Shown here in pieces: positions 38,111 through 58,377 of a stretch of 64,000 nt of DNA. The first letter of the stretch is position 1; each line of letters opens with the position of its first letter. Both the position numbers and the translations under genes were made by a program. The notes beneath the pieces were generated by a model, which was given only the letters and a program-made list of their open reading frames with translations, did no database searches and was not told the DNA's origin. The DNA is from Stylophora pistillata (Eukaryota). The DNA is taken from positions 190,407 through 254,406 of the forward strand of contig NW_019217844.1 of assembly GCF_002571385.2 (NCBI RefSeq), in the 5' to 3' direction.

Positions 38111-38121
38111 GGGGAATCCCC
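38111..38121. promoter_or_regulatory. NF-kB site upstream of TNFR-like gene 1
   Basis: GGGGAATCCCC, a pseudo-palindromic 11-bp p50-type site ~330 bp upstream of the ATG; CRE TGACGTCA at 38165-38172. Confidence 0.7.
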
Positions 38122-38439
38122 GTAGAACTCAGCTGGCGGCACGGCTTTTGTGAGAGTGTACGAGTGACGTCACACACACCACTGTACTCAATTCTCCTGC
38201 TCAATTCGTAGTTGACGGTCTTCTTTCGTGAGGTACTACCCCTTGGCAGGTCAGCTAATTTTCCAAACTAAATTCTATTATATACATATACAAAGTTTTG
38301 TTTCCACTAATTCGATCACTGGTTGAACAATAATTATTTAGTGTGTTTGTACTATCGAGATTATAACTACAAGCGCAAGTTTGATATTAATAGTACATTT
38401 TACATTTTTCTATTCATTTATTTTAGAGAACCAAGTGCG

Positions 38440-41124
38440 ATGAACTTTCTTTGTGGACATCTTTCCATACTCTTCTTCCAGGGTAACTGGTTGTTTAAAT
38501 CAAAATTTTTTGCGATTTCGGTAAGTTGCAGTGTCAGCAATATTATTAAGAAATGGATAATTGCAGGGAAAACAATACTGCAGGAAAGCGTACGATCGTT
38601 TTCTCAACGAACTCTTTTAAATCTCTCTTACGTAGAAAGAAGAAACACGTCGAACTATAATATGTGACCGAAAAGTTATGCTGAAACTCTGTATTCAGCT
38701 GTTATCCCGGACCGTAGCTAGTTAATAATTATTTCACCCTAAAAATTGATCGTGTGATTCGCAGGCTAGCGTGATATCAACAGCACCTCGCTTGCGTTCA
38801 TCAATGGAAGCCCACGATAAGCTACGCATCTGGCAACATTTCATCGTCGCGAAACATCTATATTTCATGTAACCTATAAATGTTTTGATCTAACACTTTT
38901 GATTTTAGCAAATTGGACTGTTCCTTTCGCAATTAACCGAACACATTTCTCCGCATAAAAACTCTTGAAAGTGAGATAGGTAGATCTCTTTCTTAAAAGG
39001 AAATTCCTCTACGATCACATTAAGAAGTTTCGAGTGTGGGTTCGATTTCTTGATTTGCCTTTTGCTGTTGATCTGGCTCAGCGAGGGCATGCATATCCAA
39101 CTTTGGCTTTTAGAAGCAAAGTCATACTCTCTATCGACTATGGGTTGATTGATTGGTACAGAGAGGGTTATCTCTGCTTGGTTATTCTTCACATTTTCTT
39201 GATTTTTGTCTTTTCTTTCCACAGTTATTTCTTGCACTTTCAACATTCAGTACTGTTAAAGGCAAAAATTGGCAGTGCCCAGATTGCAATAAAGAAGGAT
39301 ATATCGAAATCATTGATCCGAAAACTGGCAATTGTGAAACATGCTGGCCTTGTCCTGAATGTGGGGAGGGTGCAGGTTCATCTGTTCAATGCAAATCGAG
39401 TGTACCTAGGGGCACAGACATACACTGTGTTTCTTGCATTATGGGCATTAACTTCTCTAACAGCTCCAGTACTGAAAAGTGCCAACCTTGTGGTGTCTGT
39501 TCAGGAAAGCACGAGCATGTCACAGCTGAATGTTCCCCTTTGAGTGATGTGGAATGTGAATGTGAAAGTGGATTTTATAGAAACAAAACCACTCATGAAT
39601 GCCAGTCATGTGATTCCTGTTGCTTCACTGATGCAGACGATGATATCATCGAAAAATGTCAGGAAAACGTTGAAATCAAAGAAGATGAACAATCTGTGTT
39701 CAGCCCCTCTACAGCCATTGCAAAAACCACAACTTCATTCAAATCAATCAAGATCCATAAATCTGTAACTCCTTTTCTTCTGGGCTCCACTGGTATTCCA
39801 GTTCCTTCGAGGACCCAATTAATCCAATCTACACCAACAAGTGTTTCATTTCCAATTCAAAAGCATGATGTGGTACCTACAGAAAATGTGATCATTATGA
39901 ATGTACATACAACAGGACATGAACATGGTGAAAGTATGAAATGGATCAGAGGACTTACATGCACTATGGGTGTTTCTATTTTTGTCATACTGTGTTGTTG
40001 TTTACTCTACCTAGTGTTAAAAAGAGTAAGGAAAAACAGAGGAAACAGAAATGTATTACCAGCTGTATTTTATCGTGTACCTCAGCATGATGTGGAAAAC
40101 TATGGGTTGCAAAAGAGGATTGATGGGCACTGTACCCCTGGTTCTGATGAATCAAGAAGAAATTCAAATACAGTTGTTTTTCAAAAGGATCATGGAGTTG
40201 TAAAAGGGGATCAGCTTGAGAACACTGCCAGCAAAGACTCAGTTCAGACAGGTGAAATTAAGGAAAACTAAAGGGTCATTAGTCTAATTTACTGGGATTA
40301 AGGGTTACACAGCCAAAATAATGATAACTTTGGAGAAACACAACACGGTGCCATTTGAAGTGATTGTAACCTCTAGAATAACAATAGTTGCACTAAGTGT
40401 TTTCCTTAGCTACTCTGGTAATTATAACATAACACTTTTTACTTTTTTCTTCCATTGAAGGATAGATTCAATTATTTTTATTTCTGTCTGGCAAGAAATA
40501 TTTATATTTATAAAATTCCAGTCTCTAGCCTTCAAAAGGATTGCTCACAAGGTGAGATCCTCACTTACTGTGAATTTTTCCAAAGTGAACCCTTGGTCTA
40601 TATGCCTACAAGAAAGTTTAAGAATGAAATTTTGCCACCAATGTCAGCGACATGTTTTATTATTCCTCATCGAAAATATGACACTTATTTTGCCTTTTTT
40701 TGATTCTTACATAGCATCTGATCTACTTGTTGTTGATATGCAAGGGGGAAACCATGGAGCAGGCTGTAACTCAACTCCACTTCCTCAACCTGCAAAAGAC
40801 AACTTTGGCTATTCAACCTGCATAACAGATGTACCTCAACCTATCATCTGTAAAATGTGCAGGCTACTTGACATTGAAAGAGTTGCTGATGAGAACGATT
40901 ATAGAATGCTTGGATATGAACTTGGCCTTACACCATCAGAGATCACTTCCATCAAACAAAAAAGTAAAGAGCCATCTTTTGTGCTTTTGATGGAAAAGTT
41001 TGCAACCAAGCCACACTCTGGAACACTCAATCATCTCAAATCCATATTAGTAAAACTTGAAAGATATGATGTGATTCAGGTTATAGATAAATGGGTACAA
41101 AATCAACCATTGCAGACAAGTTAG
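38440..41124 (+). CDS. TNF receptor superfamily member with death domain (gene 1); exons 38440-38520, 39225-40251, optional 40522-40551, 40715-41124; ~505 aa
   Basis: Signal peptide, TNFR cysteine-rich repeats (CWPCPEC..C..C; CQPCGVC..C..CEC..GFY..C..C..CC), S/T/P stalk, TM GVSIFVILCCCLLYLVL plus KRVRK, death domain (DYRMLGYELGL...GTLNHLKSILVKLERYDVI). Confidence 0.88.
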
Positions 41125-41233
41125 AGATTAGGCTGCAGATGCAGTTCACTTAAGGTGACTGAACACAACTTTTTTGATACCTGTGTTTCTTTCACCATTT
41201 TCTCTAAAACCCTTGATCTCTTGGTTGCCAAAA

Positions 41234-41845
41234 CTGGCAGCAAGCAAGTTACCAACACAAACTTTGTTTTTTTGACAGTGAAGCTGACGTACATGCCATT
41301 GTCATGGCGACATGAATAAATATAAACAGGCCTTTAAAATCGGTTTTGTTCATTTGTAGAAAATCTAGTCATTAGTTTTTCTTTATGATTTGCATGCAAT
41401 GAGCTTGTAACAATACTCACAAGTTCAAACCATTTTGCTAACAATTTCACAGAGAGGTCTTTAATTGTCCCTTGTTGAAGGTTCATTTGATTATTTAGAA
41501 TTTCCTTAGTTAAAAATCAATTTTTTTCAATACTCCAGTTACTTATTTCCTAAAGTATTTTCGTGCCGAATTTCGTGAAATTCTAATGAGTGGTTCTTGA
41601 AAAATAGACATATTTCCAAGAAAGCAATTTTCCATTCAATTGCAATTTTTTTACCTACTACGCATGCGCTTTATTTAACTGGGTTCTCTTGGTAACGGTG
41701 AAAAAGCTGAGGGTTCTTTGCACCATTAACTTTTCTAACACGTCTTTGTAATAAAAGATTAAAGCCCTCAATAGAAAAAAATAGCACAGATAGTGCGGAT
41801 ATGTGTCGAGTAAACAAAACGACCACTCTGTTGACAGCATGTTTG
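41234..41845 (+). repeat. Non-coding block duplicated downstream of TNFR gene 2 (51366-51744 plus 53161-53445)
   Basis: Colinear high-identity alignment by eye: GCAGCAAGCAAGTTA..ACACAAACTTTG...TGTAGAAAATCTAGTCATTAG...CTACGCATGCGCT...GCATGTTTGTTT. Confidence 0.85.
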
Positions 41846-57171: not shown

Positions 57172-57461
57172 GTTTGTTTGGCAGCCCTCGGCCTTGTGGC
57201 AGCGTTTGGCCACCAACAAATATTTTTTTCCGACCGCGGGAAAAAAAAAAAAAAACTAGTGGCAGCGCTCGGCCGGGTAGTATTTAATTTTCATTTGATT
57301 TCATTTATCTTTGGTTTCATTTTATTTCTATTTTACATTTTACTTTCACTTGCTTTTATTTTAAAAAGAAAAATGAGAAATAAATAGAAATAAAAAAAAA
57401 TAACAAAAATAATTCCTACAAATTTGAATATTTTTAATGGCAGTTCTCGGTCACCATACCA

Positions 57462-57910
57462 CCTGTGCTTGAAAGTCCTTGAATTTCATGTTTTGTTTTC
57501 AAGGACTTGAAAACCCTTGAATTTAGACTAAGGTCCTTGAAAATTTCTGAAAAGTCCTTGAAAATAAGCTCAGGTGAATCAAAGTCCAAGTTTTCTTTTG
57601 TTTTCGATGTTTCTAGTACAAATCGCTAAAACGAGTTTCCTTTTCAAATCCCGCGTCCGGTTACGTTATTTGACACGTGATTTTTATTTATTTTGTAACC
57701 TTGGTTACCTAGCTCATGATCACTCTGATATGCATTCTTGAAGTCACGCTCGTTGGACTTATCGGCCGGTCCTGCAATGTTTTTTCTTTTTTTATTAGCT
57801 CCTATTTAATGCAGATGGTACTTGAATTTGAGAGCCAAGGTCCTTGAAAATGGCCTAAAAAGTCCTTGAAAGTCCTTAAATTGGGTTCCTGAAAAAGTGC
57901 AAGAACCCTG
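57462..57910. mobile_element. Partial DNA-transposon-derived MITE with AAGTCCTTGAA subterminal repeats
   Basis: Multiple GTCCTTGAA motifs at both ends; right terminus GTGCAAGAACCCTG. Confidence 0.5.
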
Positions 57911-58367
57911 TTTACCTACCTTTCCTGATCACTTAGGTCTGTTTAACTGACCTTTCTCTCCTTTCGTATTCCATGTAATTAATGATACATCACAGCATTA
58001 TTTTAACCAGAAATATTTGCAAGAACAATGGTTGGCATCCATAATGACCTCCTGGTCATTAAATCCCTTCGAAAGCCTCACCCCATATAACCCAGAGTGC
58101 AGTGGGTGGCGGTTTACTTCGACTGGTGTATAATTGTTTGATAAGCGGGGACCTCGACCACTAAATTTTAAAGGTTTTTAAAAGGTTTGCAACAAACGCT
58201 AAGGAAAGGATCACTAACCGCAAAACTTAAACGTGTGTAGAGTGTCTGCCTAACTGTCCCAAGTTTGAAATTATCAGCTGATTCTTAACGCGAAAAGTTA
58301 GTTGTTTCGTACCCAGGATTGTGCTTATCGATGAAGATGCACGGCGCTAGCAAGGAATGGAGGGAAA

Positions 58368-58377
58368 GGGGAATCCC
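58368..58377. promoter_or_regulatory. NF-kB site upstream of TNFR-like gene 3
   Basis: GGGGAATCCC. Confidence 0.6.

What the first reader, a model, noticed from the sequence alone, without database searches (positions are those of the whole stretch)
38111..58377. All three tandem TNFR genes have a canonical p50-type NF-kB site upstream: candidate feed-forward TNF/NF-kB locus in a cnidarian
Seen: GGGGAATCCCC (38111), GGGGAAACCCC (45050) and GGGGAATCCC (58368) each lie 0.26-0.86 kb upstream of a TNFR start codon, although the surrounding promoter sequence shows no obvious similarity. Gene 1 also has a perfect CRE (38165), and gene 3 has TGACGTCT at ~58849. Established: GGGRNNYYCC sites with G4/C4 flanks are preferred by p50-like NF-kB, the type cnidarians have, and TNFRs signal to NF-kB. 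Inference: the sites were kept by selection and make the cluster NF-kB-inducible, forming a positive feedback loop relevant to stress, immunity or bleaching.
Basis: partly seen in the sequence, partly recalled or inferred. Interest (0 to 1): 0.78.

Follow-up and report, generated by a model that had tools for sequence, protein, structure and literature searches.

The report
Conserved NF-kB site upstream of coral TNFR genes
An 11-letter DNA word identical to the best-known binding site of the immune regulator NF-kB sits just upstream of a subfamily of coral death-receptor (TNFR) genes and has been kept there across many coral species, so these receptors are very probably switched by NF-kB, although binding and the proposed feedback loop are still untested.

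Summary
The three sites exist exactly as described. They are the only GGGGAAWCCC matches in the window, and all lie on the gene strand, 329, 260 and 864 bp upstream of the three TNFR start codons.

**Not chance.** The 397.6-Mb genome holds 669 such words, one per 594 kb. The same 11-mer, GGGGAATCCCC, lies upstream of g1/g2-like TNFR death-domain genes in every other coral assembly I could fetch, including Desmophyllum: 12 gene-strand sites in 222 kb against 0.37 expected. It also lies upstream of 4 of 20 distant paralogues in this genome. Flanks are unalignable. It is the top GC-rich k-mer in an unbiased scan.

**The word.** It is the MHC H2 kB site, the optimum for p50 homodimers. Cnidarian NF-kB is p50-like, and this genome has one Rel-homology locus.

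**Gene 1.** RNA contigs show it is expressed. The site lies at most 123 nt upstream of transcribed sequence.

**Weaker points.**
- Site 2 is not independent: the gene 1 and gene 2 promoters are homologous.
- Site 3 lacks the 11th base, lies beyond a young MITE insertion, and is absent from both gene-3 orthologues with enough upstream sequence.
- NF-kB binding, inducibility and the feedback loop are inference.

The assembly gap lies in a transposon-like palindrome between genes 2 and 3 and does not touch the claim.

**Verdict:** real, selected cis-element; a new member of a known kind.

The parts
38111..38121 (+). kB site 1, GGGGAATCCCC, the exact MHC H2-type 11-mer, 329 bp upstream of the g1 ATG
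   Evidence: Invariant in orthologous promoters L001 and L002. The same 11-mer lies upstream of distant homologues.
38165..38172 (.). Perfect CRE, TGACGTCA, 54 bp downstream of site 1
   Evidence: Conserved in L002 (TGACGTCA at 1820). One mismatch in L001 (TGGCGTCA). This block is absent from the g2 promoter.
38234..38249 (+). 3' end of the g1 5'UTR exon (its 5' end and the TSS were not determined), followed by intron 38250-38426
   Evidence: In one search, run X1 has loose letters TACTACCCTTTGGC before 38425, which match 38234-38247 with one change. GT lies at 38250 and AG at 38425-38426.
38427..38520 (+). g1 exon carrying the ATG (38440) and 27 codons of signal peptide
   Evidence: PolyA RNA contigs join 38425-38519 to 39224 in three runs.
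39225..40249 (+). g1 exon encoding the cysteine-rich ectodomain and the transmembrane segment
   Evidence: TNFR_c6 weak; p75NTR E = 2e-7.
40713..41124 (+). g1 death-domain exon up to the stop codon
   Evidence: Pfam Death 32.6 bits. RNA joint 40249 to 40713.
45050..45060 (+). kB site 2, GGGGAAACCCC, 260 bp upstream of the g2 ATG; homologous to site 1
   Evidence: Its core GGGAAACCCC equals a Nematostella TRAF3 promoter site bound by Nv-NF-kB in EMSA (PMC10329013).
45081..45088 (+). TATA-like TATATTTA, 21 bp downstream of site 2 (inferred core promoter)
   Evidence: Read from the sequence. No RNA evidence.
45310..45390 (+). g2 first coding exon, 27 codons, as in g1
46221..47333 (+). g2 ectodomain and transmembrane exon (open frame; its 3' splice end was not determined)
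   Evidence: (77% nucleotide identity to the g1 exon).
49550..49909 (+). g2 death-domain exon
   Evidence: Pfam Death 28.4 bits.
58368..58377 (+). kB site 3, GGGGAATCCC followed by T, 864 bp upstream of the g3 ATG; lineage-specific or lost elsewhere
   Evidence: Its flank 58290-58410 is single copy. No counterpart in L030 or L031, even allowing one mismatch.
58411..58700 (.). Young high-copy MITE-like insertion, with a partial tandem duplication, between site 3 and the g3 core promoter
   Evidence: (D6) and 60: 2459 first-look candidates, with copies 97% identical.
58848..58855 (+). TGACGTCT half-CRE at the start of the block that aligns with the g3 orthologue
   Evidence: Not conserved in L030, which has TATATAAT there instead.
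59232..59249 (+). g3 first coding exon (MIMWGL), followed by GTAAGT
   Evidence: No RNA evidence.
60070..60843 (+). g3 ectodomain and transmembrane exon (open frame)
   Evidence: orthologues at 64% identity.
54710..57399 (.). Palindromic transposon-like element holding the assembly gap (56000-56775) and an alpha-kinase fragment (55224-55570); not part of the regulatory feature

Best explanation
The 11-bp near-palindrome GGGGAA(T/A)CCCC is a conserved promoter-proximal cis-regulatory element of one subfamily of scleractinian TNFR death-domain genes, the subfamily to which genes 1 and 2 belong.

It is most likely bound by a homodimer of the coral's single p50-like NF-kB, which would put these receptors under NF-kB control.

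In gene 1 the site lies at most about 120 nt upstream of transcribed sequence, next to a CRE. In gene 2 the inherited copy lies about 20 nt upstream of a TATA-like box.

Site 3, upstream of gene 3, is a weaker, non-conserved copy displaced by a MITE insertion. It may or may not function.

What is shown and what is inferred:
- Shown: presence, rarity, strand bias, conservation, expression of gene 1, and presence of an NF-kB gene.
- Inferred: NF-kB binding, activation rather than repression, and a TNFR-to-NF-kB-to-TNFR feedback loop.
For: **Rarity**
- 669 GGGGAAWCCC words in 397.6 Mb, the same as the reversed control.
- 3 in this 20-kb stretch, P = 6e-6.

**Conservation beyond alignable DNA**
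- 13 strict hits in 221.8 kb of 13 homologous loci against 0.37 expected.
- 12 of them are on the gene strand, 0.35-3.6 kb upstream of a g1/g2-like TNFR exon or annotated start: L001, L002, L004 x2, L025 x2, L026, L027 x2 (Desmophyllum pertusum), L032 x2 and L033. One of these, L032:19556, has no TNFR exon inside the fetched locus; a next tandem gene beyond its end is assumed.
- L034 carries GGGGAATTCCC, another consensus kB site, at the equivalent place.

**Paralogues in this genome**
- 4 of 20 paralogue upstream regions carry the site, all on the gene strand and 1.0-2.1 kb upstream of the CRD exon, against 0.25 expected (P = 1e-4).

**Not repeat-borne**
- Flanks are unrelated.
- The flank of site 3 is single copy.

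**Unbiased scan**
- Among k-mers of at least 50% G+C and not low-complexity, the kB word ranks first at 9, 10 and 11 letters in 23 TNFR upstream regions.

**Identity of the word**
- GGGGAATCCCC is the 11-bp MHC H2 site of the p50 homodimer crystal 1SVC. It has the highest apparent p50 affinity on protein-binding microarrays and is the only one of three tested sites that p50 homodimers transactivate (PMC9262625).
- Sea-anemone NF-kB proteins (the cnidarians tested) bind like p50, not like RelA or c-Rel (PMC5700166).
- GGGAAACCCC is bound by Nematostella NF-kB in EMSA, and that promoter is NF-kB-activated in a reporter assay (PMC10329013).

**NF-kB gene**
- One Rel-homology locus in this genome, at C125.

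**Expression**
- Spliced polyA RNA contigs of gene 1 occur in several studies. A 5'UTR exon ends at 38249.
Against: - No binding, chromatin or perturbation data exist for any coral here.
- Within the closely related orthologues (74-78% identity), the promoter as a whole is well conserved and several invariant runs are as long as the kB site. That alignment alone is therefore not decisive.
- Sites 1 and 2 share ancestry.
- Site 3 and the gene-3 half-CRE are not conserved in orthologues.
- The middle gene of the syntenic cluster in another coral (L002/L030) has no such site.
- Most TNFR paralogues lack it, and no listed site falls near the C28 TNFR cluster or upstream of the C7 TNF ligand genes.
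- All 19 gene-linked sites read GGGGAA on the coding strand, with A preferred before the site and GA after it. A symmetric homodimer does not explain this. It could reflect shared descent or a different, asymmetric binder.
- The TSS of gene 1 is only bounded, not mapped, so a 5'UTR location is not excluded.
Confidence: 0.65

Rival explanations
1. The element is real and under selection, but a factor other than NF-kB binds it. Candidates are a ZAS-type zinc-finger protein (HIVEP/Schnurri family, which in mammals binds the same MHC H2 kB motif) or an unknown cnidarian factor that recognises an extended asymmetric word of the form A-GGGGAATCCCC-GA. Regulation would then be independent of NF-kB, or would compete with it.
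For: Orientation is constant in 19 of 19 gene-linked sites. The central base is always A on the coding strand. Flanks are biased: A before the site in 15 of 19, and A two bases after it in 15 of 19. That HIVEP proteins bind this motif is from my own knowledge and was not tested here.
Against: The word matches the p50 optimum base for base (PMC9262625). The natural variants seen, GGGGAAACCCC and GGGGAATTCCC, stay within the kB consensus. An A before GGGG is also what I recall for NFKB1 SELEX motifs. Shared descent of the promoters could by itself explain the constant orientation.
Confidence: 0.17
2. Chance plus hitch-hiking. The word arose once, was copied with the genes by tandem duplication, and has simply not yet decayed. 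It has no function.
For: The g1 and g2 promoters are homologous. The family grows by tandem duplication. The word is not enriched genome-wide over its reversed control.
Against: Around most copies the flanks are saturated while 11 of 11 bases persist. This holds across at least six other assemblies, including Desmophyllum, and in paralogues sharing only 30-40% protein identity. Cross-species P is about 3e-16. Introns of g1 and g2 are already unalignable.
Confidence: 0.03
3. For site 3 alone: a fortuitous or recently arisen match with no role in gene 3. The gene-3 promoter proper starts near 58850.
For: It lacks the 11th C. It lies 864 bp from the ATG, with a young 290-bp MITE in between. Homology with the orthologue L030 starts only at 58854. 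Neither L030 nor L031 has a match upstream on the gene strand, even with one mismatch.
Against: The chance of a strict gene-strand match within 2 kb upstream of one gene is about 0.002 (rate). It shares the preceding AAA with site 1. Without the MITE it would lie about 190 bp from the conserved promoter block.
Confidence: 0.45

Closest known systems
MHC class I H-2 enhancer kB site (11 bp, GGGGAATCCCC; p50 homodimer crystal 1SVC)
   Same: Identical 11-bp sequence: two GGGGA half-sites around a central A:T. It is the highest-affinity site for p50 homodimers and the one they transactivate (PMC9262625).
   Different: That site is a vertebrate element of an antigen-presentation gene. Here the word lies upstream of cnidarian death-domain TNFR genes, and binding has not been shown.
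Nematostella vectensis TRAF3 promoter, the experimentally supported cnidarian NF-kB target
   Same: A gene of the TNFR/NF-kB pathway with kB sites within 1 kb of the start. One validated site, GGGAAACCCC, equals the core of site 2. It also implies feedback on the pathway (PMC10329013).
   Different: That gene is an adaptor, not a receptor. It has three clustered sites, not one. It was validated by EMSA and reporter assay, but its conservation across species was not shown. Here the reverse holds: deep conservation is shown and biochemistry is lacking.
NF-kB-inducible TNFR superfamily genes of mammals (for example Fas/CD95 and CD40; from my own knowledge)
   Same: Receptor genes of the same superfamily whose promoters carry kB sites, giving signal-dependent up-regulation of the receptor.
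   Different: There is no orthology of the sites. The closest solved ectodomain relative of gene 1 is p75NTR. Whether the coral receptors activate NF-kB is unknown.
Enrichment of predicted NF-kB motifs in promoters of heat-induced genes of Exaiptasia (Cleves et al. 2020, as summarised in PMC13042239)
   Same: Computational prediction of NF-kB targets in a symbiotic cnidarian, linked to stress.
   Different: That work was a statistical enrichment over many genes in one species. Here a single exact word is tracked across paralogues and species of one gene family.

Membership tests
kB (NF-kB) binding site | Sequence fits GGGRNWYYCC, or the 11-bp p50-type GGGGA-W-TCCCC | tested here: met
   Sites 1 and 2 are full 11-mers. 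Site 3 is a 10-mer fitting GGGRNNYYCC. Identity to the MHC H2 site comes from PMC9262625.
kB (NF-kB) binding site | Lies in the promoter or enhancer of an expressed gene | tested here: met
   Gene 1: spliced polyA RNA contigs, with the site at most 123 nt upstream of the 5'UTR exon. Genes 2 and 3: position relative to the ATG only; no RNA was laid.
kB (NF-kB) binding site | Kept by selection in orthologous and paralogous promoters | tested here: met
   Met for the g1/g2 type. Not met for site 3 and the gene-3 orthologues.
kB (NF-kB) binding site | The organism has an NF-kB with matching specificity | tested here: inconclusive
   One Rel-homology locus at C125. p50-like specificity is shown for sea-anemone proteins (PMC5700166), not for this coral's protein.
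kB (NF-kB) binding site | Bound by NF-kB in vitro or in vivo | not testable with these tools
   Needs EMSA, PBM or ChIP.
kB (NF-kB) binding site | Gene expression depends on NF-kB activity and on the site | not testable with these tools
   Needs a reporter with a mutated site, or perturbation RNA-seq.
TNFR superfamily death receptor | Cysteine-rich ectodomain repeats, a transmembrane segment and a cytoplasmic death domain | tested here: met
   Death scores above the Pfam cut-off in g1 and g2. TNFR_c6 scores below its cut-off, but p75NTR and DR4 are the PDB hits. For g3 the death exon was not located in the window; its orthologue L030 has one.
Positive feedback loop TNFR to NF-kB to TNFR | The receptor activates NF-kB | not testable with these tools
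   No functional data. Inferred from mammalian death-domain TNFRs.
Positive feedback loop TNFR to NF-kB to TNFR | The ligand or the whole module is co-regulated by the same site | tested here: not met
   The only listed 11-mer near the nine-exon TNF ligand cluster on C7 lies 3' of a gene, not upstream. Only contigs up to C80 are visible in the listing.
cAMP response element (CRE) | Palindrome TGACGTCA near the start site, conserved | tested here: inconclusive
   Present at 38165, kept in L002, one mismatch in L001, and lost from g2. A single copy in 64 kb is within chance.

The most novel reading that the evidence does not exclude
The exact p50-optimal kB word is a hard-wired, Scleractinia-wide control element of a death-receptor subfamily. 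It may also control other tandem gene clusters of this genome that carry 4-6 copies of the same 11-mer at gene-like spacing (C69:322-353 kb, C47:996-1045 kb, C58:568-575 kb, C77:404-440 kb, and a death-domain cluster on C13). Together these would define an ancient NF-kB regulon. That regulon would give a mechanism for the TNFR expression differences reported between heat-tolerant and heat-sensitive corals.
Probability: 0.3. Interest if true: 0.75.

Novelty: new member of a known kind. Interest (0 to 1): 0.55.

Why it matters
A 2026 review of NF-kB in early-branching animals lists only predicted targets, such as BCL3 and TRAF3, and calls for ChIP and knock-down work (PMC13042239). The one well-supported cnidarian target is Nematostella TRAF3 (PMC10329013).

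In the papers I could search, nothing links coral TNFR promoters to NF-kB. TNFR expression is, however, repeatedly tied to heat tolerance (PMC4979521).

This finding offers a single, exact, deeply conserved site in front of a defined receptor subfamily. That is a small and cheap target for EMSA, reporter and CRISPR tests.

It would also connect two of the most often cited components of the coral stress and immune response. If NF-kB binding holds, it shows that receptor-level feedback in the TNF/NF-kB pathway predates bilaterians.

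Tried and rejected
- **Second batch of paralogue regions.** The paralogue test therefore rests on 20 of about 40 genes.
- **Orthologue-only footprinting** (g1, L001, L002). These promoters are 74-78% identical overall and several invariant runs are as long as the site, so I did not use this as main evidence.
- **Microarray scores.** I looked for the sites in the supplement of PMC5700166. They are not in the files held.
- **Other genomic clusters of the 11-mer.** I tried to name the genes at these clusters by mapping the Death, zf-TRAF, TNF, TIR and TNFR_c6 families on the genome. 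Only the C13 death-domain cluster matched. C69, C47, C58 and C77 remain unnamed.
- **Transposon origin of site 3.** Rejected: its flank is single copy and only the neighbouring 290 bp is a MITE.
- **The CRE as independent support.** Rejected as weak: one copy in 64 kb is within chance.
- **Gene-3 loci L028 and L029.** These hold too little upstream sequence (1.2 and 0.96 kb) to say anything about site 3.
- **Species.** Not identified, because names are coded. It is a stony coral, judging by its closest named relative (Desmophyllum) and by its presence in Tara Pacific coral libraries.
- **RNA for genes 2 and 3.** Not examined, because only one read-laying run of 6 kb was allowed.

Full report
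**Observation**

All are on the + strand, which is the strand of the three genes.

They are the only matches to GGGGAAWCCC in the 64-kb window. Shuffles give a mean of 0.15 and never reach 3.

I read the start codons at 38440, 45310 and 59232, so the sites are 329, 260 and 864 bp upstream.

The CRE TGACGTCA is at 38165 and TGACGTCT is at 58848. One CRE in 64 kb is within chance.

**The genes**

- Each gene has a short first coding exon, a long exon with the cysteine-rich ectodomain and the transmembrane segment, and, for genes 1 and 2, a death-domain exon.
- Pfam Death scores above its cut-off. TNFR_c6 scores below it.
- The closest solved relative of the gene-1 ectodomain is p75NTR/TNFRSF16, at E = 2e-7.
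- PolyA RNA contigs from several independent studies join 38425-38519, 39224-40249 and 40713-41200, so gene 1 is expressed.
- One contig carries 14 further letters that match 38234-38247. So there is a 5'UTR exon ending at 38249 and an intron from 38250 to 38426.
- The start site therefore lies at or before 38234. That puts site 1 at most 123 nt, and the CRE at most 62 nt, upstream of transcribed sequence.
- Contigs cannot fix the start site itself. A position of the site inside a longer 5'UTR is not excluded.

**The assembly gap**

The gap (56000-56775) is the unassembled centre of a palindrome:
- Inverted arrays of an 11-nt satellite flank it, with arms 97% complementary.
- Outer inverted repeats lie at 54710-54868 and 57241-57399.
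- An alpha-kinase fragment sits at 55224-55570.

The gap lies between genes 2 and 3, 1.6 kb upstream of site 3. No exon and no site-to-gene interval crosses it. I did not try to fill it and cannot say whether the two sides are continuous. The gene order g1, middle gene, g3 is the same on a scaffold of another coral (L030).

**Is it more than chance?**

- The genome has 397.6 Mb and 669 matches on both strands, against 672 for the reversed word. The word is therefore rare (one per 594 kb) and not generally enriched.
- Three matches in 20.3 kb has P = 6e-6, and about 0.13 such bins are expected in the whole genome.
- The full 11-mer occurs 321 times.

**Are the three sites independent?**

- Genes 1 and 2 are old tandem duplicates. 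Their ectodomain exons are 77% identical, and their introns no longer align.
- Their promoters still align significantly (score 83.5; shuffles mean 28, maximum 54), with the two kB sites in register. The block holding the CRE is missing from gene 2.
- Sites 1 and 2 are therefore one ancestral site kept in both copies.
- The gene-3 upstream region aligns with neither.

**Conservation in other corals**

The closest proteins are unnamed sequences from Tara Pacific coral metagenomes and from ENA assemblies. The closest named ones are from Desmophyllum pertusum. I fetched 13 loci around them, 221.8 kb in all.

They hold 13 strict matches where 0.37 are expected (P about 3e-16). Twelve are on the gene strand and lie 0.35-3.6 kb upstream of a g1/g2-like TNFR ectodomain exon or annotated start:
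- L001
- L002 (with its near-twin L003)
- L004, two sites
- L025, two sites
- L026
- L027, two sites (Desmophyllum; one is 355 bp before the annotated start)
- L032, two sites (for the second, at 19556, the TNFR gene it would serve lies beyond the end of the locus and is assumed)
- L033

L004 and L025 come from one assembly, and one pair of their sites has identical flanks. They should therefore count as fewer than four events.

L034 is a relative of L033 in the same assembly. At the equivalent place it has GGGGAATTCCC, a different but equally canonical kB word.

Only L001 and L002 have promoters alignable with gene 1 (70-76% identity). In that alignment the site is invariant, but so are several other runs, so it is not decisive alone. 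In all the other loci the flanks are unrelated while the 11 bases are intact.

**Conservation within this genome**

- The ectodomain of gene 1 finds about 40 TNFR genes, in clusters on C334, C301, C1248, C207 and elsewhere. Three more lie just downstream of the window on the same contig.
- Four carry the strict word, all on the gene strand and 1.0-2.1 kb upstream of the ectodomain exon, where 0.25 hits are expected in the 147 kb (P = 1e-4).
- I counted k-mers in the 3 kb upstream of 23 TNFR genes and kept only those of at least 50% G+C that are not low-complexity. The kB word ranks first among these at 9, 10 and 11 letters.
- The word is not carried by a repeat. Flanks differ, and the 121 bp around site 3 are single copy.

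**Limits**

- Site 3 is the weak one. It lacks the 11th C.
- A young MITE-like element of very high copy number (58411-58700) separates it from the promoter.
- Homology with the gene-3 orthologue L030 begins only at 58854.
- Neither L030 nor L031 has a gene-strand match upstream, even with one mismatch.
- L028 and L029 are too short to tell.
- The gene-3 half-CRE is replaced by a TATA box in L030.
- The middle gene of the syntenic cluster in L002/L030 also lacks a site.
- Sixteen of 20 paralogues lack it within the fetched region, including the three next genes on this contig.
- The C28 TNFR cluster lacks it, as far as the listing shows.
- None of the 11-mer sites listed for contig C7 lies upstream of a gene of the TNF ligand cluster there.
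- The element therefore marks a subfamily, not "the TNF system".

**What binds it**

- GGGGAATCCCC is letter for letter the 11-bp MHC H2 kB site used in the p50 homodimer crystal 1SVC.
- On protein-binding microarrays it has the highest apparent affinity for p50 homodimers. It was also the only one of three natural sites from which p50 homodimers activated transcription (PMC9262625).
- NF-kB proteins of sea anemones bind like human p50 and unlike RelA or c-Rel (PMC5700166).
- In Nematostella the TRAF3 promoter has three kB sites. One of them, GGGAAACCCC, is the core of site 2. They are bound by Nv-NF-kB in EMSA and are required for activation of a reporter (PMC10329013).
- This genome has a single Rel-homology locus, so a homodimer is the expected form.
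- The natural variants I saw (T or A at position 7; GGGGAATTCCC) stay inside the kB consensus.
- These points make NF-kB by far the most likely binder, but nothing here shows binding.

**One unexplained feature**

All 19 gene-linked sites read GGGGAA on the coding strand. Flipping the central base would give an equivalent site for a symmetric dimer.

There is also a preference for A just before the site and for GA just after it. This may be shared descent, or it may point to an adjacent or different asymmetric factor.

**The loop**

That these receptors signal to NF-kB is inferred from mammalian death-domain TNFRs. That NF-kB raises rather than lowers their transcription is inferred from the anemone reporter data. 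Neither step was testable here. The absence of a listed site upstream of the C7 TNF ligand genes argues against a fully wired feed-forward module.

**Novelty**

A 2026 review names BCL3 and TRAF3-like genes as predicted cnidarian targets, reports motif enrichment in heat-induced Exaiptasia genes, and notes that ChIP and knock-downs are still needed (PMC13042239). It has no TNFR entry.

A review of TNFR evolution mentions heat-stress responses of coral TNFRs but neither promoters nor NF-kB (PMC4979521). The Tara coral genome paper does not treat TNFRs (PMC10236652).

Within the searchable library I therefore found no prior report. The kind of thing is well known: an NF-kB site in the promoter of a pathway gene. 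It is a new member of a known kind, made more useful by unusually clean comparative evidence.

**Verdict**

| Claim | Probability |
|---|---|
| Sites 1 and 2 are a selected cis-element | about 0.9 |
| NF-kB is the binder | about 0.7 |
| Positive feedback loop | about 0.35 |
| Site 3 is functional | about 0.5 |

Earlier notes of this scan on the same window agree with what I saw in passing and did not change the reading. One describes the transposon-like element with the alpha-kinase. The other describes gene 2 as chimeric.

Noticed in passing
G000 C69:322011-353039; C47:996242-1044888 and 599509-682624; C58:568605-575355; C77:404523-440519: Other tight clusters of the same 11-mer GGGGAATCCCC, with 4-6 copies each. 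The six on C69 are all on the minus strand at 3.5-12 kb spacing, like a tandem gene array. None coincides with the listed Death, zf-TRAF, TNF, TIR or TNFR_c6 matches, so the genes there are unknown.
   Followed up: partly
G000 C13:1145684 and 1162066 (+), with Death-domain exons at C13:1153052, 1165518 and 1176721 (+): A tandem death-domain gene cluster with two GGGGAAACCCC words on the gene strand. One lies 3.5 kb upstream of a death exon, the same spacing as in genes 1 and 2. No TNFR ectodomain was detected there.
   Followed up: partly
window 54661-57458: A palindromic, transposon-like element. Outer inverted repeats are 94% complementary and inner inverted arrays of an 11-nt satellite are 97% complementary. 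It holds an alpha-kinase domain fragment at 55224-55570 (Pfam E = 9e-16), and the assembly gap is at its centre.
   Followed up: partly
window 58411-58700: A MITE-like element of about 178 bp with internal self-complementarity, partly duplicated in tandem here. The genome search gave 2459 first-look candidates, and many copies are 97% identical, so it was active recently.
   Followed up: partly
G000 C61:263991, 280235, 293958 (10-40 kb beyond the window's end): The TNFR cluster continues with at least three more ectodomain exons on the same strand. None has the strict kB word in the 7 kb upstream that I read. One 11-mer lies at C61:286070, 7.9 kb upstream of the last gene.
   Followed up: partly
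L034:8846-8856 versus L033:8848-8858: Two related loci of one assembly differ inside the element: GGGGAATTCCC versus GGGGAATCCCC. Both are consensus kB words, so this is a natural substitution that keeps the motif class.
   Followed up: no
all gene-linked sites (window, L001-L033): Constant orientation: GGGGAA is on the coding strand in 19 of 19 sites. Flanks are biased, with A at -1 in 15 of 19 and A at +2 in 15 of 19. Symmetric homodimer binding does not explain this.
   Followed up: partly
window 49550-49909 versus L027:18012-18329: The death domain of gene 2 is 58% identical to that of a Desmophyllum TNFR but only about 34% identical to that of the gene-1 orthologues, while its ectodomain is gene-1-like.
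   Followed up: partly
G000 C7:1250687-1311541: A tandem array of at least nine TNF-homology-domain exons (ligand genes) on the minus strand. The only nearby kB 11-mer (C7:1247577) lies 3' of the array, not upstream of a gene.
   Followed up: no
L013, L014, L018, L022 (C334 paralogue upstream regions): A second shared word, GATGACAGGGAAGA or close variants, recurs upstream of several C334 TNFR paralogues. It may be a further shared promoter element or residual promoter homology.
   Followed up: no
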